From: Octopus sinensis
Taxonomy: Eukaryota
Reading direction: 5' to 3'
Assembly (NCBI RefSeq): GCF_006345805.1
Contig: NC_042999.1
Coordinates: 20,646,001-20,710,000, forward strand
DNA length: 64,000 nucleotides
The translations under genes were made by a program, and so were the position numbers. The notes under the pieces were generated by a model, which made no database searches, was not told where the DNA came from, and was given only the letters and a program-made list of their open reading frames with translations. Positions 3,786 to 62,585 of the stretch are shown here, one piece after another (positions within the stretch are counted from its first letter, which is position 1; every line of letters starts with the position of its first letter).

Positions 3786-3874
3786 ACCACTAAGTTAAGA
3801 AGACGCAAACAGACCACCATCGGTTGTCAAGAATTGATGGGGGGTGGGGGCAAACACACACATATGTATATATG

Positions 3875-31331: not shown

Positions 31332-31418
31332 ATATACGGCCATATCACGTTGGAAGCAACTTCGAGGCTAGTTAGTACTTAGATGGGTGACTGTTTGGGA
31401 AACCTATGTGCTGTAAGC
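31332..31418 (+). pseudogene. 5S rRNA pseudogene with internal deletion
   Basis: TACGGCCATATCACGTTG joined to AAGCAAC...GTTAGTACTTAGATGGGTGACTG..TGGGAA.C..TGTGCTGTAAGC matches both ends of metazoan 5S rRNA with ~30 nt missing; a T-run follows. Confidence 0.8.
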
Positions 31419-31434
31419 GTCACACATTTTTTTA

Positions 31435-31890
31435 GGCGCAGGAGTGGCTCTGTGGTAAGTATTTTGCTTACCAGCCACATGGTTCTGGGTTCAGTCCCAT
31501 TGCGTGGCAAATTGAGCAAGTGTCTTCTACTATAGCCTCGAGCCGACCAAAGCCTTGTGAGTGGATTTGGTACATGGAAACTGAAAGAAGCCCGTCGTAT
31601 GTATATATATATGTGTGTGTATCTGCGTGTCTGTGTGGTTGTGTGTGTGTGTGTGTGTGTGTGCTTGTGTGTGTGTGTGTGTGTCTGTGTTTCCCCCCTC
31701 CCAACATTTCTCAACAACCAATGCTGGTGTGTTAACGTCCCCGTAACTTAGCGTTTCGGCAAAAGAGACCGATAGAATAAGTACTAGGCTTACAAAGAAT
31801 AAATCCTTGGGTTGATTTGCTCGACTAAAGGCGATGCTCCAGCATGGCCGCAGACAAATGACTGAAACAATTAAAAGAAAATAAAAGAAA
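31435..31890 (+). mobile_element. SINE family B
   Basis: Homologous to 1632-2047. Confidence 0.9.
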
Positions 31891-32775
31891 AAATAATCAA
31901 CAAACCTAATGTATACAATATTTGAAACGAAAAATATATATGTTAATATCTGGGGATGTTAATTATGTCCTGCAAAACAGTCCTTTTAAGATTAGATTTT
32001 ACATTTCCCTTTCAAAGTTTGTGTATTTCACCAGCATAGTTAATAATATCGTAAAGTTAACTGACGTATACTTTCACACATTGCATGTCAATAGTTCTTA
32101 TGTTCATACATACAAGCTCTGAAGAGCGAAACATCGATCCTTTAGTTTGATGACCTAACTACAAGACGTAGCCGTAGTCAAACTTGGAGTATATTTAAAC
32201 CATGGTTTGCTCTATCAAGTTTAAATTGCGGCTGCAGGAAAACAAGAACACAAATAAAGACCTCGATGACATTTTCAACGACACTTATTACAACTGTGTG
32301 CTTAAAACACATAAATAACTTTGCAGAAAATGACAGCAATATAATCTGTAAATGATATCGCAGTCTATTATCACACAACATTGCTTAACTTTCAACATTT
32401 TGCTGACCTTGTATTTGTTTATTGCCGCGCTTCGGTTTTAAAAAACGAAATATCGATCGATTTCTCAGCTCGTAAATAATCGTGTCATATTTTGCAAAAC
32501 GCCAGCAAGTGAAGGACAGGGGTTAGTCAATTACGTCGACGCCAGTGTTAAACTGGTGCTTATTTTATCGACCGTGAAATGATCAAAGGCCAAATTCGGT
32601 GAAATTTGAACAAAGAACGTAAAGACGGACGGAATGCTGCTTGGTGTTTTACACGGCATGCAAATGATTCTGCCAGTTCGGCACATTTCAGATCATAAAT
32701 ATACAAGACAACAATAATGAAGATGGCAACAACAGCAATAACTAGAATGAAAGCAACGTCAATAATAATAATGAT

Positions 32776-32827
<52 letters not shown>

Positions 32828-32845
32828 GTAATAATAATAATAATG

Positions 32846-32889
<44 letters not shown>

Positions 32890-34180
32890 CTGGAATATGA
32901 GTGAAGTAAAGAATATAGATAGAAAAATACGCAAGCTGCTGAGTTGTAATAGGATGCACCACCCAAAGGCAGACGTAGATCGCCTTTACCTTCCCAGAGC
33001 CCAAGGAGGTCGAGGCCTGATCCAATTTGAACTAGCTTACAAAACAACCACAATTGGAATGGACAAATATCTCGAAATATCGAATGACTGGATGCTAAAG
33101 CTCGTGGAAAATCACGAGAGACGAAAGAAGCTTCATTCTATCATAAAGGAAAGCAAAAACTTTGCTATTGATCTCGTGCAGGATACCCAAACTGAACAAC
33201 CCGAGGGAATGATGGCAATGAAAAAAGCGCACGAGCAATTGGCTGATAGGTGGGAGGAGAAACCTCTGCACGGCAAATATGTGACCCGCAGCAAACAAGC
33301 TGATGTTGACCAGAAGCAAACCCATCAGTGGCTACGGAGCTCAGGGCTAAAAGCAGAGAGCGAAGGTTTCATCCTGCCTGCTCAAGATCAAAGCCTATTA
33401 ACCCGGAACTACCAGGCCAATGTGATGAAAAATGGAGCAGACCCAAAATGCCGATTCTGCAACGACATGATTGAAACAGTGGACCACCTAATCTCTGGAT
33501 GTAAAGTCTTAGCACCAGTGGAGTATAAATTAAGACATGACAGAGTTGGCCAATATCTCCACTGGCTAATAAGTTGGCATTACAATATCAAAACTGCCGA
33601 CAAGTGGTATAATCACCACCCTGAGGCTGTAACTGAAGGAGAAAATGTAACCATTCTGTGGGACTTTCCAGTACATACAGACCGAACCATCAAGGCCAAT
33701 AAACCAGATATTGTTGTGAAAGACCAAAACAATAAAGTTTGCTTATTGATCGACATGAGCATCCCCTGTGATCATAATATCTCAGCGAAAGAGTTTGGCA
33801 AGCTCAGAAAATATAAAGACCTACTCATTGAAATTGAGAAAATGTGGCATCTCAAGGCGGTTACAATACCAGTGATCGTAGGAGCACTAGGAATGATCAA
33901 GAAGGGAACCGAAAATTATATGAGAATGATCCCTGGCTTACCATCCCTGCAAGAAGTGCAAAAGATTGTCTTAACTGGTACATCACACGTATTGAGAAGA
34001 GCATTGTCGATGTGAGAACTGTTGCTGCTCATGTATTTTAATTTAACTTTAAAAAAAAAAAAAATGAACGAACTACTGAGTTTGGTTTAATGGCCTACCA
34101 ATGTATACTATGAGTTTCTTTGCCCTAGGAGTCGGGAAGACACTCGGCAAGAAATGGAAACAAATTTTAAAGGAAAAAAA
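32890..34180 (+). mobile_element. 5'-truncated Dong/R4-clade non-LTR retrotransposon inserted in (TAA)n
   Basis: (TAA)n directly on both sides; open C-terminal ORF; 3' UTR also found at 44152-44250. (TAA)n targeting is established for Dong elements. Confidence 0.9.
32897..34015 (+). CDS. C-terminal part of Dong/R4 ORF: post-RT region, CCHC knuckle, restriction-like endonuclease (372 aa; truncated, ATG not native)
   Basis: RLYLPRAQGGRGL, KPLHGKY, CRFC...ETVDHLISGC, RHDRV, ILWDF, KPDIVV, LIDMSIP, KYKDL, VIVGALG; no stop codons. Confidence 0.9.
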   Translation: MSEVKNIDRKIRKLLSCNRMHHPKADVDRLYLPRAQGGRGLIQFELAYKTTTIGMDKYLEISNDWMLKLVENHERRKKLHSIIKESKNFAIDLVQDTQTEQPEGMMAMKKAHEQLADRWEEKPLHGKYVTRSKQADVDQKQTHQWLRSSGLKAESEGFILPAQDQSLLTRNYQANVMKNGADPKCRFCNDMIETVDHLISGCKVLAPVEYKLRHDRVGQYLHWLISWHYNIKTADKWYNHHPEAVTEGENVTILWDFPVHTDRTIKANKPDIVVKDQNNKVCLLIDMSIPCDHNISAKEFGKLRKYKDLLIEIEKMWHLKAVTIPVIVGALGMIKKGTENYMRMIPGLPSLQEVQKIVLTGTSHVLRRALSM

Positions 34181-47415: not shown

Positions 47416-48599
47416 CTTTGAATAAGAAAAAATTCATAAAAGCGAACAATAGCAACTTGCTCTCACCTTTACTTTTATCTGAAAGTAAATGCGACATCAT
47501 AAGAAGTAACTGTAAATACAGAGGGTAAGAAATCTCTCATTAAAAGAATGGCAGAGGAGAACCTAGAAGTCTACAAAACACAGCTTAAATTAAAGGATTT
47601 CAAAGGGAAGCACTGTAGGTATCTAGCTGCAGCCAAATCATCATTTGAAAAATGAAAATATTCTGTATTCAATAATCTATGCCCGAGTAGTTCTTGCTTA
47701 TATATCCATCAATGTAAATGATGTACATAATTCCTCATCTATTAAATATAGAACTGTATTATTTAATATTTGTAGGAGAGATACGAGTATCAGCTAAGGG
47801 CATCTTTTGGTCCAGAAGTGGAAGTGGCTTCCTCTTCATGGCTATTCTGCAAACGACTGTGTGTACGAAAGAACATTATATGCACGCGTGCGCGTGTGTG
47901 TGTGTGTGAGAGAGAGAGTATTTCTCTTTCTCCTCAAGATATCCTCAAATATTCCCCCTTGGCGGAAATTAAGGGAAGTCGTGTACTTCAGTTTCTTTCC
48001 TGGTTTTGGGATAATTACAACGAAATCGCCCAAGTGAATGGGGATATTTACAGTATGATCTAGCAGACTGGATACACCAGGTGATTAAGGGGATTCGCTT
48101 TTAACTGTGTCATACTGATCACTTATGACGTCTGTATCGTACTCGTTAAATTGCAACTGTTTCACACTCACGAAAAGAATTACTTGCAAACATAAAAACC
48201 ACAGATTTTCCCTTGACTTAAAAGTGTCGGCTGATATTTTTTATGAAAGGATTGCCTGTAGGCTTTAGTTATTATAAGAAATGATAAAAGAAAATTTCTA
48301 ATTGCTAAAGCTACTGTTGCAATTTGGTATCAAGGGAAGAAATAATTCTTAAGTCTTGTTGAACTTGTTTCAACATCCATGATGGGACACTGCCTTGAAA
48401 TGGTTAATCGAAAAAAACGCCCTCAGCACTAATTTTCTAAGTTTACTATTTATTGTATCGATTTCATTTGTCGAACTGCTAATTTACAGAGACGTAAAAA
48501 AACCAACACCGGTTGTCATTTGGTGGTGGTAGTGGTGGTTGTGTTGTTCACCCCAAGGACGGATCACACACTGGTCGACCACTTGAGGTCATGAAGAGC

Positions 48600-49340
48600 G
48601 ATAGTATCAACTTCACGAAAATCCACGTCAAACGACCAGAGAGTTCACAGAGCAGATGAATTGTGATTTAAAAAAAGATGTGGTGATCCACGTTCACTCA
48701 ATGGGCAAGGTTCGTGCTTGGATGCCACACACTTTGAGCGAAAACAACAAAATCAACGCTCCACAATCTCCACCAGATTGCTCAAATCGATATCGCACAC
48801 CCCATGGTCACAAACAACGTTTTCTATACCGCACTGCGACCGGCGACGAAAAATGGTGCCTTTACGTCAATATGAAGCAGCGAAAAGACTATGTTGTGGG
48901 ACTGGGAAGGTGTAACTCATTACGAACTGCTTGAGCGCAACCAAGCACTTAATGCAGAGCTCCACGTTCATAAACTGCACCGACCCAACGAGGCAATTCA
49001 GCAAAAAAGACCAAATGGGCGAAATGGCATTCTTATGGAACACGTCAACGCTCATCCTCAAATCGCCAATATAACAAGAGCAGCGATTCATGAACTCGAA
49101 TCGGAAGTGCTGCCTCATCCTCTATACTCTCCATAATTGGCGTCGTCAGATTTTCATCTCTTAGGACGGCTTTCGAACTCTTTGCCCCGTGTATCGTTCA
49201 ATAATGACGTAGAATTGAAAGCTTGGTTGGATGAATTCTGTGAGTCAAGCCTGGGAGATTTCTATCGCGTTGGCGTCTAAAATCTTATTGAATGAATGGA
49301 GGAAGTCGTAAACAGCAACGGAGAGTATATTATTGATATT
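48600..49340 (+). mobile_element. Degenerate mariner transposase
   Basis: EQMNCD..HSMGK, WMPHTL (WVPHEL), TGDEKW, LWDWEG, HPLYSP*LASSDFHL; stops and frameshifts; TIRs not identified. Confidence 0.85.
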
Positions 49341-58937: not shown

Positions 58938-59340
58938 TTTCATACATAAATATAAGAGGAAATGTTTTAACCACTAAATGGAAACCCTTATGCTAGAAGA
59001 AGATCCGCTATGGTCTCAACCACTAAAAATTGGTGTTAAAATTGATATTATCAAATTAATATCCAATTTTTCACCCTCGTTTTGATTTTAATTATATATA
59101 TATATATATATATGTATGTATATATATATATGTATGTATGTATGTATGTGTGTGTGTTTATGTGTCTGTGTGTGTCTGTGTCTGTCTCTGTTCTCCCCAC
59201 CATCACTTGACAACCGATGTTCTTGTATTTACGTCCACGTAACTTACCGGGTTGGCAAACGAAATCGATACAAGTAAGGGGCTTACGAAGAATAAGTCCT
59301 GGTGTCAACTGACAAGAACAAGAAAATAAAAAGAAAAAGG
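58694..59340 (+). mobile_element. SINE family B split by a ~160-bp insert (58936-59092) within its internal (TA)n
   Basis: 5' half 58694-58850; 3' half ~59150-59340. Confidence 0.75.
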
Positions 59341-59433
59341 AATATATATATATATATATACATATATATATAAATATATATATACATACATATATATATA
59401 CACACACATATATATATACATACATATATATAT

Positions 59434-59484
<51 letters not shown>

Positions 59485-59706
59485 TCAATATAGGATGGCA
59501 AAAAATTTTGTAGAATTTTTTTTGCCACCAGCGGCCTAGTGGGAAAAAAATTAAATAGTCATAGACCATTTTTAAGTTCAACATCACAATCAAGGAACGG
59601 CCATAATAGGCCATTCACCCACTAGAAATAACAGCCAAAAGCTTCAACCGCAAAATAACATCAATTCCGTAAACCAGGAGAAAATTAAAAAAACATTTAC
59701 CCTGTA

Positions 59707-59813
59707 ATTTCTTATACGATGCACCGTTTCATCTACTGTTTAATGGTAAACTAACCTGATTAAATTAAATCAAGCCAATCTACCATAGGCCCTTAGATTC
59801 ATCAGTAAGAAAT
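59707..59813 (-). ncRNA. Type I hammerhead ribozyme (array copy 1)
   Basis: Reverse complement of the motif at 60617-60723. Confidence 0.85.
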
Positions 59814-60616
59814 AGCCAAGTCGGAACAGATATCTTTCACGAGGCATTCCCGTCCCTGCCTCGGCAATATCTGACCTAAAATTTTCAAATCATCGCACTC
59901 GCGCCAAATTTATCGGCAGCAAATAAATATAAGCCGCCGATTCCATTACGGAATTAACCAGAAAATACATAATTAATCAATATAGGGTGGCAAAAAATTT
60001 TGTAGAATTTTTTTTGCCACCAGCGGCCTAGTGGGAAAAAAATTAAATAGTCATAGACCATTTTTAAGTTCAACATCACAATCAAGGAACGGCCATAATA
60101 GGCCATTCGCCCACTAGAAATAACAGCCAAAAGCTTCAACCGCAAAATAACATCAATTCCGCTTGATTTAATTTAATCAGGTTAGTTTACCATTAAACAG
60201 TAGATGAAACGGTGCATCGTATAAGAAATTACAGGGTAAATGTTTTTTTAATTTTCTCCTGGTTTACGGAATTGATGTTATTTTGCGGTTGAAGCTTTTG
60301 GCTGTTATTTCTAGTGGGTGAATGGCCTATTATGGCCGTTCCTTGATTGTGATGTTGAACTTAAAAATGGTCTATGACTATTTAATTTTTTTCCCACTAG
60401 GCCGCTGGTGGCAAAAAAAAAATTCTACAAAATTTTTTGGCACCCTATATTGATTAATTTTGAATTTTCTGGTTAATTCCGTAATGGAATCGGCGGCTTA
60501 TATTTATTTGCTGCCGATAAATTTGGCGCGAGTGCGATGATTTGAAAATTTTAGGTCAGATATTGCCGAGGCAGGGACGGGAATGCCTCGTGAAAAATAT
60601 CTGTTCCGACTTGGCT

Positions 60617-60723
60617 ATTTCTTACTGATGAATCTAAGGGCCTATGGTAGATTGGCTTGATTTAATTTAATCAGGTTAGTTTACCATTAAACAGTAGATG
60701 AAACGGTGCATCGTATAAGAAAT
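60617..60723 (+). ncRNA. Type I hammerhead ribozyme (array copy 2), predicted cleavage after A60715
   Basis: ATTTCTTA-CTGATGA-ATCTA-[long stem-loop]-TAGAT-GAAA-CGG-TGCA-TCG-TA-TAAGAAAT: 8-bp helix I, 5-bp helix II base, 4-bp helix III, GUA cleavage triplet, fully canonical core. Confidence 0.88.
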
Positions 60724-61107
60724 TACAGGGTAAATGTTTTTTAATTTTCTCCTGGTTTACGGAATTGATGTTATTTTGCGGTTGAAGCTTTTGGCTGTTA
60801 TTTCTAGTGGGTGAATGGCCTATTATGGCCGTTCCTTGATTGTGATGTTGAACTTAAAAATGGTCTATGACTATTTAATTTTTTTCCCACTAGGCCGCTG
60901 GTAGCAAAAAAAATTCTACAAAATTTTTTGCCACCCTATATTGATTAATTATGAATTTTCTGGTTAATTCCGTAATGGAATCGGCGGCTTATATTTATTT
61001 GCTGCCGATAAATTTGGCGCGAGTGCGATGATTTGAAAATTTTAGGTCAGATATTGCCGAGGCAGGGACGGGAATGCCTCGTGAAAAATATCTGTTCCGA
61101 CTTGGCT

Positions 61108-61214
61108 ATTTCTTACTGATGAATCTAAGGGCCTATGGTAGATTGGCTTGATTTAATTTAATCAGGTTAGTTTACCATTAAACAGTAGATGAAACGGTGC
61201 ATCGTATAAGAAAT
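61108..61214 (+). ncRNA. Type I hammerhead ribozyme (array copy 3), predicted cleavage after A61206
   Basis: Same motif as 60617-60723. Confidence 0.88.
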
Positions 61215-61332
61215 TACAGGGTAAATGTTTTTTAATTTTCTCCTGGTTTACGGAATTGATGTTATTTTGCGGTTGAAGCTTTTGGCTGTTATTTCTAGTG
61301 GGTGAATGGCCTATTATGGCCGTTCCTTGATT

Positions 61333-61396
<64 letters not shown>

Positions 61397-61584
61397 TATA
61401 TACATATATATATACGATAGTGTATTCTGTTTACATAACGTATAAGACTTGACATTAGACCTTATCTAATTTGCATTATGTAATTGATAATCACCTTACA
61501 CTAATGAAATGTATACAAGATGTAACTATATATTCTGTAAATGATGTCTCAAAGTTTGTGTTATTCTCTTTATTATACACTCTC

Positions 61585-61720: not shown

Positions 61721-62585
61721 AACGGGAAGCTTTATGAAAATAAACAAAAGACGAAGGCAGGTGTAGTACAAATAAACAATTGTATTAGTATGGCGCTCAG
61801 GAATATAAATAAAACAAGTCTTTTACGTTTCGAGCCTACGCTCTTCAACAGAAAGATACACAGAAAAGAAACACGGAGAGAAACAAGGAGAGAGAAAAAT
61901 GCGTGCAGAAGCTAACGATTCAACATGGCGATCTGATTCTGGCCGGAAGTCAGAGATCAAACGTGAGACGCAAGAGCGTAAATAGGGGAGATAACAGGGT
62001 CAAATGACTTCGCCCCAACATATGGGTGCGTGTGTGTATGAGAGAGTATGTGGTGCGTATGAAAGGTCTGGACGTGTGTATGTATGTATGATGTGATGTG
62101 TAATGTCGTATGGTGTAGTGTAGAGAGGGGAGATGAGGGGGAGAGTGAGAGAGAGTGGGGGAGGGGAAGAGATGAGGGGGGAATGAGTTTGATGAGGAGG
62201 GGGAGGAGAGAGGAGGGGAGAGGATGAGGGGGGATAGGGGTAGAGAGAAGGGGAGTGAGGGAGCAGAGAGAAAGAGAGAAGGGGAAGAGGGAAGAAGAAA
62301 GAGGAAAGAAGAGGAGAAAAGAAGAGAAGAGGAGGGAAAGAGAGTAGGGGTGAAAAGATGAAGAACCGAAGAGAAGAAGGAGTCGGGGGGGGGGGGAGGT
62401 TAGATGAGGAGGGTGGAAGTCGCGACCAAATGGCGTAAAAGAGCGAAGAGAGAAGATTAATCCTTGTTCACGGCGTAAACAGCAATCCGGATGGCCTCTG
62501 TGCAAGGACAAACCAAACACAGACAGCTGTTGCAAAGAGTGACCGGTGGAGCGGAAATGGCGTGAGACCGGTGTGTCGTTGGCTT
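61721..62585 (-). mobile_element. 5'-truncated Penelope-like retroelement within (TA)n
   Basis: 62580-62413 encodes NDTPVSRHFRSTGHSLQQLSVFGLSLHRGHPDCCLRREQGLIFSLRSFTPFG (GIY-YIG C-terminus), then a CT-rich UTR and a tail with an HHR-like motif. Confidence 0.85.
61819..61856 (-). ncRNA. Hammerhead-like motif with CUGUUGA core
   Basis: TCTTT-CTGTTGA-A-GAGC-GTAG-GCTC-GAAA-CGT-A-AAAGA; perfect helices I and II; A6 replaced by U. Confidence 0.6.

What the first reader, a model, noticed from the sequence alone, without database searches (positions are those of the whole stretch)
59481..61336. Retrozyme-like tandem array: each ~491-bp unit encodes a canonical type I hammerhead ribozyme
Seen: the unit contains ATTTCTTA-CUGAUGA-AUCUA...UAGAU-GAAA-CGG-UGCA-UCG-UA/-UAAGAAAU, with a perfect 8-bp helix I, a canonical core and a GUA site. 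Helix II is extended by a long hairpin (AUGGUA/UACCAU plus 12 bp rich in G.U wobbles), and those wobbles pair only on this strand, which points to selection at the RNA level. There are three complete HHRs (59707-59813 minus; 60617-60723 and 61108-61214 plus) and a partial one at 60161. Consecutive cleavage would release a 491-nt monomer (60716-61206). Established: animal non-LTR retrozymes are non-coding tandem repeats with type I HHRs that yield circular RNAs. Inference: this is such a family, with a rather long monomer, possibly mobilised by the Penelope elements that share its (TA)n habitat. I cannot tell whether it has been described.
Basis: partly seen in the sequence, partly recalled or inferred. 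Interest (0 to 1): 0.95.

Follow-up and report, generated by a model that had tools for sequence, protein, structure and literature searches.

The report
Self-cleaving hammerhead retrozyme repeat array
A 1.86-kb non-coding block of 491-bp repeats, each carrying a hammerhead self-cleaving RNA motif, looks like a new family of a known animal mobile element (non-LTR retrozyme), and its shape and TA-microsatellite site match insertions made by Penelope-like retrotransposons.

Summary
Positions 59480-61337 are built from a 491-bp unit. A 2.4-unit plus-strand array (60161-61337) joins head-to-head to a 1.39-unit minus-strand array (59480-60161), and both outer ends abut (TA)n.

Cleavage would release 60716-61206 (491 nt). 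Only 28 of 20,000 shuffled units gave any hammerhead, and 1 gave one as good.

There are caveats:
- No Rfam hammerhead model matches.
- The 10.1-11.1 pair is A-U, not the conserved G-C.
- No diverged copy could be found, so covariation is untested.
- No Penelope coding sequence is recognisable in the window.

Two additions:
- The helix III segment ACGGUGCAUCGU is self-complementary. The predicted lowest-energy fold of a two-unit transcript is the classical double hammerhead, whereas a single unit disfavours helix III.
- The tandem array, the inverted 5'-truncated copy, the variable 3' ends and the (TA)n target reproduce the published insertion signature of Penelope-like elements.

Retrozymes of 51-972 bp and a ~500-bp hammerhead satellite are already known. 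This is a new member of a known kind.

The parts
59342..59481 (.). Left (TA)n microsatellite, impure with CA/TACA interruptions. It abuts the 3' end of the minus arm and is the presumed target.
   Evidence: TRF period 2, 70 copies; sequence read.
59480..60161 (-). Minus-orientation arm of 1.39 units (unit 45-491 then 1-234). It is 5'-truncated at the central junction, and its 3' end lies at unit position 234, on (TA)n.
   Evidence: blastn of the unit against the window, 98.7-99.1% identity; inverted repeats I1-I5.
59707..59813 (-). Complete type I hammerhead motif. It is the only one on this arm, so this arm alone cannot release a monomer.
   Evidence: Descriptor hit, identical to the two plus-strand copies.
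60161..61337 (+). Plus-orientation tandem array of 2.4 units (unit 431-491, 1-491, 1-491, 1-131). It is 5'-truncated at the junction, and its 3' end lies at unit position 131, on (TA)n.
   Evidence: TRF period 491, 99% matches; blastn.
60161..60229 (+). Partial hammerhead: the 3' 69 nt only. It lacks the 5' strand of helix I, the CUGAUGA box and the 5' strand of helix II.
   Evidence: Unit coordinates; sequence.
60617..60723 (+). Complete type I hammerhead. Helix I is 8 bp. The core is CUGAUGA / GAAA. Helix II is 5 bp (A10.1-U11.1), then a 7x7 internal loop, then a 19-bp hairpin. Helix III is ACGG/UCGU with loop UGCA. The cleavage site is GUA, between 60715 and 60716.
61108..61214 (+). Second consecutive complete hammerhead, with cleavage between 61206 and 61207.
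60716..61206 (+). Predicted 491-nt monomer released by the two cleavages. Folded as a circle it gives -143.0 kcal/mol, z -5.2, with 60% of bases paired.
   Evidence: The antisense circle gives -106.9 kcal/mol.
60703..60714 (+). Self-complementary helix III segment ACGGUGCAUCGU of unit 1. In the lowest-energy fold of the two-unit transcript it pairs with 61194-61205.
   Evidence: The hairpin alone is -1.2 kcal/mol; the 12-bp duplex is -19.5. The MFE of 60600-61230 contains this duplex.
61194..61205 (+). Helix III segment of unit 2, the partner in the double-hammerhead duplex.
60008..60420 (.). Head-to-head junction. Arms 60008-60161 and 60267-60420 are 99% complementary, with 105 nt between them. 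A transcript running through the junction would form a long hairpin.
   Evidence: Inverted repeat I5. The spurious miRNA-precursor hits, all well below the families' gathering scores, reflect this hairpin.
61336..61414 (.). Right (TA)n microsatellite, abutting the 3' end of the plus arm.
   Evidence: TRF period 2, 40.5 copies.

Best explanation
This is one insertion of a non-autonomous, non-coding retroelement of the animal non-LTR retrozyme kind.

Shown from the sequence:
- The unit is 491 bp, and every complete unit carries a type I hammerhead motif on one strand only.
- The plus arm has two consecutive complete motifs.
- The array sits inside a (TA)n microsatellite. It consists of a tandem array plus an inverted copy that is 5'-truncated.

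Inferred life cycle:
1. A transcript of at least two units folds into a double hammerhead. The self-complementary helix III segments of neighbouring units form a 12-bp duplex. Each CUGAUGA/GAAA core then cuts after the GUA of the other unit.
2. This releases a 491-nt RNA with a 5'-OH and a 2',3'-cyclic phosphate.
3. A host RtcB-type tRNA ligase circularises it. In the circle or monomer, helix III is disfavoured and part of the core is sequestered, so the circle should resist re-cleavage.
4. The RT and GIY-YIG endonuclease of an autonomous Penelope-like element elsewhere in the genome copy the circle or multimer for more than one unit length. They insert it at a nicked (TA)n.
5. Both target strands prime synthesis, at internal AU microhomologies of the RNA. 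This gives two arms that diverge from a 5'-truncated centre and have different 3' ends.
For: - Array and unit structure.
- Three identical hammerheads at the stated sites, with a complete core, A15.1-U16.1, A17 and helices of 8, 5 and 4 bp.
- Chance is low: 0 of 100 window shuffles were as good. Of 20,000 unit shuffles, 28 gave any hit and 1 was as good.
- Strand-specific structure: -33.8 against -18.8 kcal/mol for the 107-nt motif, and -143 against -107 for the circle. All five non-Watson-Crick pairs in the helix II hairpin are G.U on the sense strand. The sense strand is G+U-rich.
- Double hammerhead: the helix III hairpin is -1.2 kcal/mol, with pair probability 0.03 in the single motif. The 12-bp self-duplex is -19.5. 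The unconstrained MFE of 60600-61230 is the double hammerhead, with both helices I formed across units. Metazoan type I HHRs with a short helix III and a palindromic loop are known to act as dimers (PMC4209133; PMC7229834).
- Non-coding: the longest ORF lying wholly within repeat sequence is 63 aa (60 aa in the consensus unit), and the concatenated repeat ORFs have no homologue. No other ribozyme or RNA family appears on either strand.
- Retrozyme criteria and size range: PMC7229834 and the 2026 preprint.
- Insertion signature: 5' truncation, partial tandems, an adjacent inverted 5'-truncated copy, (TA)n bias and no discernible TSD are the published hallmarks of Penelope-like insertions (PMC8557442). 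All are seen here.
Against: - No Rfam hammerhead model matches at the gathering score or at E<=10, even on the 131-nt stretch.
- The 10.1-11.1 pair is A-U, whereas G-C is highly conserved. This may lower activity.
- There is no recognisable loop 1 / loop 2 contact.
- The copies are 99% identical. The 10 variable sites avoid the ribozyme only at p about 0.085. So there is no covariation or conservation evidence.
- No second locus was found in the window, in public metagenome, prokaryote-genome or viral contigs, or in the protein collection.
- No Penelope RT or GIY-YIG sequence is recognisable in the window.
- Transcription, cleavage, circularisation and reverse transcription are all untested.
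Confidence: 0.75

Rival explanations
1. The array is a remnant of a Penelope-like element's own terminal repeats (pLTRs). The copy would have lost its RT/EN ORF, or be a run of 5'-truncated 3' ends, rather than belong to an independent non-autonomous family.
For: HHRs of PLEs sit in the pLTRs, and PLE insertions are tandem/inverted and target (TA)n. The 2026 preprint finds retrozymes to be sister groups of pLTRs, so the boundary between the two is soft.
Against: - The period is a clean 491 bp for 2.4 + 1.4 units, with no ORF remnant. Pfam and motif scans find no RT or GIY-YIG sequence.
- The two arms end at different unit positions (131 and 234). A PLE 3' end should be fixed.
- PLE HHRs are typically minimal, with little or no helix III (at most a short palindromic stem), a bulged base before 10.1 and a G10.1-C11.1 pair. 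This motif has a 4-bp helix III, no bulge and A-U.
Confidence: 0.12
2. The array is an ordinary satellite DNA that happens to carry, or once carried, a hammerhead. It would have been amplified locally by unequal crossing-over or replication slippage, with no RNA-mediated transposition.
For: Hammerhead satellites such as newt satellite 2 and cricket pDo500 (~500 bp) were long described this way. Only one locus is visible, and its copies are 99% alike.
Against: Unequal crossing-over does not readily give a head-to-head inverted partner whose junction is out of register (unit 45 against unit 431), nor two outer ends at different unit positions that both sit on (TA)n. The array is short, not satellite-sized.
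Confidence: 0.07
3. The hammerhead-like motif is inactive or fortuitous, and the repeat has no ribozyme-based biology.
For: No Rfam hit. The 10.1-11.1 pair is A-U. A competing UGAUG/CAUCG pairing sequesters part of the core in the single-unit fold. There is no conservation evidence.
Against: - A chance occurrence of this quality is about 5e-5 per unit.
- The motif lies on the strand with the far stronger fold.
- Helix III is a perfect 12-nt self-complement, which yields the double hammerhead as the MFE. That feature was not in the search descriptor, and it is typical of real metazoan HHRs.
Confidence: 0.05
4. The head-to-head arrangement is an assembly artefact, such as a fold-back chimeric read, and the true locus is a simple tandem array.
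For: Complex PLE-type insertions are known to trouble assemblies. The arms are nearly identical.
Against: A fold-back artefact is mirror-symmetric about its centre. Here the arms meet at unit 45 and unit 431, leaving a 105-nt unpaired centre. Each arm has private variants (unit positions 97, 219, 239 and 372 on the minus arm). The outer ends differ.
Confidence: 0.04
5. The array is an integrated copy of an exogenous viroid-like or deltavirus-like circular RNA agent.
For: It would give a small circular RNA with a hammerhead, and the copy is of more than unit length.
Against: A ribozyme is found in one polarity only. No other ribozyme family appears on either strand, and there is no ORF. The composition (36.5% GC) equals that of the window (35.8%).
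Confidence: 0.02

Closest known systems
Metazoan non-LTR retrozymes (Acropora ~220-240 bp, Mytilus ~350-390 bp, axolotl 330/350 bp; Cervera & de la Pena 2020, PMC7229834)
   Same: [quoted passage not shown] The predicted unit-length RNA is well folded. The family sequence is species-specific. Mobilisation by PLEs has been proposed.
   Different: - The unit is longer than the 170-400 nt of that paper, though within the 51-972 bp of the 2026 preprint.
- Helix II carries a 7x7 internal loop and a 19-bp hairpin.
- The 10.1-11.1 pair is A-U.
- There is no recognisable loop 1 / loop 2 contact.
- The HHR is predicted to work as a dimer, like the amphibian HHRs, rather than as a monomer like the coral and mussel HHRs.
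- Expression and circularity are untested here.
pDo500 satellite of Dolichopoda cave crickets (PMC2837043)
   Same: Both have a ~500-bp monomer with one hammerhead that processes multimeric transcripts to monomers. Single- and double-hammerhead modes have been proposed for pDo500. Its helix III contains a G.U pair, and its 10.1-11.1 pair varies by compensatory change.
   Different: - pDo500 makes up ~5% of a genome in long arrays. Here there is a single 1.86-kb locus with an inverted arm in a microsatellite.
- The pDo500 ribozyme is compact (49 nt).
- Its double form pairs helices I and II between molecules. Here helix III is the shared helix.
Newt/axolotl satellite 2 hammerheads and the avocado sunblotch viroid double hammerhead
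   Same: All have a weak helix III capped by a palindromic loop. Two neighbouring motifs therefore form an extended helix III and cut efficiently only in multimers.
   Different: Helix III here has 4 bp rather than 1-2. Activity has not been measured.
Hammerheads in the pseudo-LTRs of Penelope-like elements (PMC4209133; PMC8557442)
   Same: Both are type I topology with a long helix II, poorly defined helix I contacts and a palindromic helix III region. The insertion architecture and the (TA)n target are the same.
   Different: - There is no RT/EN ORF.
- There is no bulged base between positions 9 and 10.1.
- The 10.1-11.1 pair is A-U instead of G-C.
- Helix III is full rather than minimal.
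Plant LTR retrozymes (PMC4918200)
   Same: The logic is the same: a ribozyme-delimited RNA, a circular intermediate and parasitism of an autonomous retroelement.
   Different: The plant elements have type III HHRs, LTRs, PBS/PPT, 4-bp TSDs and Ty3/gypsy helpers. None of these applies here.

Membership tests
Hammerhead ribozyme, type I | Conserved core C3 U4 G5 A6 N7 G8 A9 and G12 A13 A14 | tested here: met
   CUGAUGA and GAA are present in all three copies.
Hammerhead ribozyme, type I | A15.1-U16.1 pair and a non-G residue at position 17 (NUH site) | tested here: met
   A-U pair; the site is G16.2 U16.1 A17.
Hammerhead ribozyme, type I | Three helices around the core, with helix I open | tested here: met
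   Helices I, II and III are 8, 5 and 4 bp, and all pairs are standard. Helix I is closed only by the rest of the unit.
Hammerhead ribozyme, type I | G10.1-C11.1 pair at the base of helix II (highly conserved, not absolute) | tested here: not met
   The pair is A10.1-U11.1. Conservation is stated in PMC4209133. Compensatory changes at this pair occur in pDo500.
Hammerhead ribozyme, type I | Match to a curated covariance model (Rfam hammerhead families) | tested here: not met
   No hammerhead hit at the gathering score, nor at E<=10 on 2.2 kb or on 131 nt. The likely reasons are the extra ~62 nt in helix II and the A-U pair, but I could not test a trimmed sequence.
Hammerhead ribozyme, type I | Tertiary contact between loop 1 and loop 2 | tested here: inconclusive
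   Helix I has no internal loop within its 8 bp. The 7x7 internal loop of helix II and the junction beyond helix I could substitute. This cannot be decided from the sequence.
Hammerhead ribozyme, type I | Covariation or conservation of helices and core across family members | tested here: inconclusive
   Only 99%-identical copies are available. There are 0 of 10 variable sites in the HHR, p about 0.085. No other copies could be retrieved.
Hammerhead ribozyme, type I | Site-specific self-cleavage | not testable with these tools
   Needs in vitro transcription.
Metazoan non-LTR retrozyme | Tandem repeat of a few hundred bp, with at least two consecutive units carrying complete type I HHRs (MFE below -5 kcal/mol) | tested here: met
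   TRF period 491, 2.4 copies. HHRs at 60617-60723 and 61108-61214. HHR MFE is -33.8.
Metazoan non-LTR retrozyme | Non-coding; no LTRs | tested here: met
   The longest ORF lying wholly within repeat sequence is 63 aa (60 aa in the consensus unit), with no homologue. There are no terminal repeats other than the unit itself. PBS and PPT were not searched for specifically.
Metazoan non-LTR retrozyme | GC content below 50% | tested here: met
   36.5%.
Metazoan non-LTR retrozyme | Unit-length RNA predicted to be highly self-paired | tested here: met
   The circular fold is -143.0 kcal/mol, z -5.2, with 60% of bases paired. It is branched rather than rod-like.
Metazoan non-LTR retrozyme | Multiple dispersed genomic copies | not testable with these tools
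   There is one locus in the window. The source genome is not available, and the public collections searched hold no copy.
Metazoan non-LTR retrozyme | Expressed as linear and circular unit-length RNA | not testable with these tools
   No RNA data.
Metazoan non-LTR retrozyme | Co-occurrence with autonomous Penelope-like elements in the genome | tested here: inconclusive
   The window shows no RT (beyond a LINE) and no GIY-YIG sequence. A 64-kb window cannot speak for the whole genome.
Penelope-like element (autonomous, or its pLTR) | RT plus GIY-YIG endonuclease ORF between the repeats | tested here: not met
   No such ORF or motif.
Penelope-like element (autonomous, or its pLTR) | Insertion signature: 5' truncation, partial tandem, adjacent inverted 5'-truncated copy, microsatellite (TA)n target, TSD not discernible | tested here: met
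   compared with PMC8557442. This shows 'inserted like a PLE', not 'is a PLE'.
Viroid-like / deltavirus-like circular RNA agent | Ribozymes in both polarities, or a delta-antigen-like ORF | tested here: not met
   Only a sense-strand HHR is present. No other ribozyme family appears on either strand, and there is no ORF.

The most novel reading that the evidence does not exclude
This locus would be a young insertion that preserves the integration mechanism of animal retrozymes. A circular or multimeric ribozyme RNA would have been copied by a Penelope-like RT from both nicked strands of a (TA)n target, a form of twin priming. Priming would have been internal, at AU microhomologies, rather than at a defined 3' end.

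That would account for four features together: the two arms diverge from the centre, they are 5'-truncated, their junction is out of register, and they end at unit positions 131 and 234.

If other insertions in the genome show the same pattern, it would be the first structural evidence, as opposed to phylogenetic evidence, that retrozymes use the PLE machinery. It would also show that the template has no fixed 3' end, as expected of a circle.
Probability: 0.3. Interest if true: 0.55.

Novelty: new member of a known kind. Interest (0 to 1): 0.35.

Why it matters
Retrozymes are a widespread source of abundant small circular RNAs in animals. How they move is still unsettled. The 2026 preprint says the precise mechanisms remain to be elucidated.

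This family adds little as a catalogue entry. The locus is nevertheless clean and young, with about 1% divergence between copies, and it yields two testable predictions:
- **Insertion signature.** It combines a retrozyme with the full Penelope-type insertion signature. The prediction is that (TA)n targeting, inverted 5'-truncated partners and variable 3' ends recur genome-wide.
- **Ribozyme switch.** The fold predicts a double hammerhead in multimers and a disfavoured helix III in monomers. Such a switch would cut multimers while protecting the circle.

The A10.1-U11.1 pair and the very long helix II also explain why covariance-model scans would miss such families.

Tried and rejected
- **Rfam scans.** I ran cmscan on the whole window at the gathering score, on 59300-61500 at E<=10, and on 60605-60735 at E<=10. 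No hammerhead hit appeared. The miRNA-precursor hits are far below their gathering scores; those within the array reflect the long inverted repeat at the junction or, the helix II hairpin, and the rest lie in the flanking (TA)n.
- **Search for diverged copies, for covariation.**
  - The gapped core pattern gave 13 loci in metagenome contigs and 4 in prokaryote genome contigs. All are chance matches in bacterial coding sequence, with no similarity to the unit.
  - An exact 23-mer gave 0 hits in viral contigs.
  - The concatenated repeat ORFs gave nothing against the 5.8-billion protein collection.
  - Exact-protein look-ups of three window ORFs found nothing on record.
- **Literature strings.** Neither ribozyme nor SINE strings occur in any searchable paper.
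- **Penelope coding sequence in the window.** Pfam on most non-low-complexity ORFs of 75 aa or more (a hand-picked subset of the 108) found only a mariner Transposase_1 fragment. Six-frame motif scans for GIY-YIG and YxDD found nothing convincing.
- **Host identification.**
  - The LINE ORF's best named relative is Penaeus indicus at only 60% identity. Its best hit overall (88%) is an unnamed ENA metagenome contig (sample ERZ22666216), which from its record name I take to be a sewage sample.
  - A SINE-derived peptide found nothing.
  - ARAGORN found no tRNA.
- **Alternative hammerhead register.** I considered a bulged base between positions 9 and 10.1, as in PLE HHRs. I rejected it because it would leave an extra U before G12.
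- **Pol III A/B boxes in the unit.** There is no convincing match by eye, and I did not pursue it.
Full report
**What is there**

Tandem Repeats Finder reports a 491-bp period over 60161-61337, with 2.4 copies and 99% matches. Dinucleotide (TA)n tracts lie at 59342-59481 and 61336-61414.

I aligned the unit 60716-61206 back to the window to resolve the whole block.
- The plus arm, 60161-61337, reads unit 431-491, 1-491 (494 bp with homopolymer indels), 1-491, 1-131.
- The minus arm, 59480-60161, reads unit 45-491 and then 1-234 on the opposite strand.
- The two arms meet head-to-head at 60161, and both outer ends run straight into (TA)n.
- No other copy, even a diverged one, exists in the 64 kb.
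- The unit has 36.5% GC, like the window at 35.8%.
- Its ribozyme-sense strand is G+U-rich: 108 G against 71 C, and 182 T against 130 A.

**The ribozyme motif**

I ran a descriptor search of both strands of the whole window. It required CUGANGA, 8-120 nt, GAAA, helix II of at least 3 bp, helix III of at least 1-2 bp closed by A15.1-U16.1, a non-G at position 17, and helix I of at least 4 bp.

The parts are:
- Helix I: AUUUCUUA/UAAGAAAU, 8 bp.
- Helix II: AUCUA/UAGAU, 5 bp, then a 7x7 internal loop, then a 19-bp hairpin with five G.U pairs.
- Helix III: ACGG/UCGU with loop UGCA.
- Cleavage site: GUA.

Cleavage would fall at 60715|60716 and 61206|61207, releasing 60716-61206. The piece at 60161-60229 is only the 3' 69 nt of a motif.

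The chance expectation is low.
- 100 dinucleotide-preserving shuffles of the window gave 0.14 loose hits each and none as good as the observed motif.
- Of 20,000 shuffles of the unit, scanned as a tandem, 28 contained any hit and 1 had 17 or more helix base pairs.

**Where 'canonical' is too strong**
- No Rfam hammerhead model matches. This holds at the gathering score on the window, at E<=10 on 2.2 kb and at E<=10 on the 131-nt stretch alone. The extra ~62 nt in helix II is the likely reason, but I could not test a trimmed sequence.
- The 10.1-11.1 pair is A-U, whereas G-C is described as highly conserved (PMC4209133). Compensatory changes at this pair do occur in the cricket pDo500 ribozyme (PMC2837043).
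- No loop 1 / loop 2 contact can be recognised.

**Strand specificity**

The 107-nt motif folds at -33.8 kcal/mol (z -5.6) on the sense strand and at -18.8 (z -3.2) on the complement. The 491-nt circle folds at -143.0 (z -5.2, 60% paired) against -106.9.

All five non-Watson-Crick pairs in the helix II hairpin are G.U on the sense strand. Suppose a perfect palindrome decayed by transitions without selection. Each change would then be equally likely to give G.U or A.C on a given strand. Five out of five has a probability of about 0.03. That figure is my inference. It is suggestive, not decisive.

**A double hammerhead**

Helix III as a hairpin is worth only -1.2 kcal/mol. In the ensemble of the single 107-nt motif it has a pair probability of 0.03, because UGAUG of the core pairs with CAUCG instead.

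The 12 nt ACGGUGCAUCGU (positions 15.1 to 16.1) are self-complementary, and two copies form a 12-bp duplex of -19.5 kcal/mol.

I folded the two-unit transcript 60600-61230 without any constraint. The minimum-energy structure (-199.5 kcal/mol) contains:
- that duplex, 60703-60714 with 61194-61205;
- helix I formed across units, 60617-60624 with 61207-61214 and 61108-61115 with 60716-60723;
- both helices II.

This is the classical double-hammerhead topology. The literature describes it as the normal working mode of metazoan type I hammerheads with a short helix III and a palindromic loop (PMC4209133). It has been shown experimentally for axolotl retrozymes (PMC7229834).

It predicts cleavage in multimers and protection of the monomer or circle. 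This feature was not part of my search descriptor, so it is independent support that the motif is real.

**Variation among copies**

The five partial or complete copies differ at 10 positions. All lie at unit positions 21-372, and none lies in the ribozyme (392-491 plus 1-8). With 22% of the unit being ribozyme, zero of ten has p of about 0.085, which is not significant. Nearly all variants are private to one copy. That fits mutation after a single insertion event, but it does not prove one.

**What it is**

The locus meets the sequence-level description of metazoan non-LTR retrozymes (PMC7229834): short tandem repeats, a type I hammerhead in each unit, no LTR and low GC. PBS and PPT were not searched for.

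It also passes the operational test of the 2026 preprint: a TRF repeat, at least two consecutive complete hammerheads, and a hammerhead MFE below -5 kcal/mol.

It is non-coding. The longest ORF lying wholly within repeat sequence is 63 aa (60 aa in the consensus unit), and the concatenated ORFs find nothing in the protein collection.

A monomer of 491 nt is not exceptional. Consensus lengths of 51-972 bp are reported, and the pDo500 hammerhead satellite is about 500 bp.

**How it got there**

Published hallmarks of Penelope-like element insertions are (PMC8557442):
- frequent 5' truncation;
- partial tandems;
- an inverted 5'-truncated copy adjacent to the 5' end;
- a bias for microsatellites, with (TA)n given as the preferred target;
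- target-site duplications that cannot be discerned.

This locus shows every one of them. In addition, the two arms end at different unit positions...UUGAUUAAU at 234 and ...GAUUGUGAU at 131. Each ends in AU next to (TA)n. That fits priming by the nicked microsatellite at internal microhomologies of a template that has no fixed 3' end. A circle or a multimer is such a template.

The junction is out of register (unit 45 against unit 431, leaving a 105-nt unpaired centre), and each arm has private variants. Both points argue against a fold-back assembly artefact.

I found no mention of microsatellite targeting or inverted partners for retrozymes in the two retrozyme papers I read. This may be a small new point.

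Pfam on most non-low-complexity ORFs of 75 aa or more found only a mariner fragment, and the LINE ORF at 32717-34015 matched only zf-RVT weakly (E 0.0016, below the curated cutoff). Motif scans found no GIY-YIG sequence.

**Limits**

No diverged copy could be retrieved from any collection. Covariation and conservation, which are the strongest computational tests, therefore remain open. Transcription, cleavage, circularisation and mobilisation are all inferred.

The host is unidentified.
- The LINE's best named relative is a shrimp protein at 60% identity.
- From memory only, and untested, the abundant SINE-like repeat of the window resembles the common SINE of octopus genomes.
- No paper in the searchable library links hammerheads to the octopus beyond a passing mention.

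**Verdict**

This is a new family of a known kind of element. It has an atypical but plausible hammerhead, a predicted double-hammerhead switch and a textbook Penelope-type insertion signature. The interest is moderate to low.

Noticed in passing
window 31332-31419 (+): A 5S rRNA-like sequence scores just above Rfam's gathering score (41.2 against 38 bits). It has a 32-nt internal deletion. A long T-rich tract (a 21-nt T/C run containing T11) lies 10 nt upstream, and a T7 run 8 nt downstream. The tRNA-like head of a SINE-like repeat starts at about 31436, immediately downstream. It is probably a 5S pseudogene or a 5S-derived SINE module.
   Followed up: partly
window 59186-59341, 1847-1963, 31700-31807, 48453-48529, 3791-3844: A SINE-like repeat family at 74-78% identity. 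In the two copies I read in full (~1780-2040 and ~31436-31890) it has an internal (TA)n/(TG)n microsatellite and an A-rich tail. ARAGORN calls no tRNA. The retrozyme array's left (TA)n follows directly after the tail of the copy at 59186-59341. From memory only, it resembles the common SINE of octopus genomes. A peptide search and a literature string search found nothing.
   Followed up: partly
window 32717-34015 (+), with further frames to about 35064: The C-terminal part of a LINE-type reverse transcriptase ORF (432 aa) with a weak zf-RVT match. It has 209 homologues across animals. The best hit (88%) is on an unnamed ENA metagenome contig (sample ERZ22666216) that looks like a sewage sample from its record name. 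The best named hit is Penaeus indicus at 60%.
   Followed up: partly
window 48605-49133 (+): A degraded mariner-type transposase fragment (Pfam Transposase_1, E 1.5e-6), spread over two reading frames.
   Followed up: no
window 60053-60374: The head-to-head junction gives sub-threshold hits to plant miRNA-precursor models (MIR1435 at 50.7 bits against a gathering score of 94, and MIR7723). These only reflect a near-perfect hairpin with arms of 154 nt or more. A read-through transcript would be long double-stranded RNA and could feed small-RNA silencing of the family.
   Followed up: no
window 62125-62358: A purine-rich (GA-rich) degenerate minisatellite with a very strong GC skew (up to 0.84), just right of the array's flank. 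The ORFs listed over it, and the 187-aa ORF at 59051-59614, are low-complexity artefacts.
   Followed up: no
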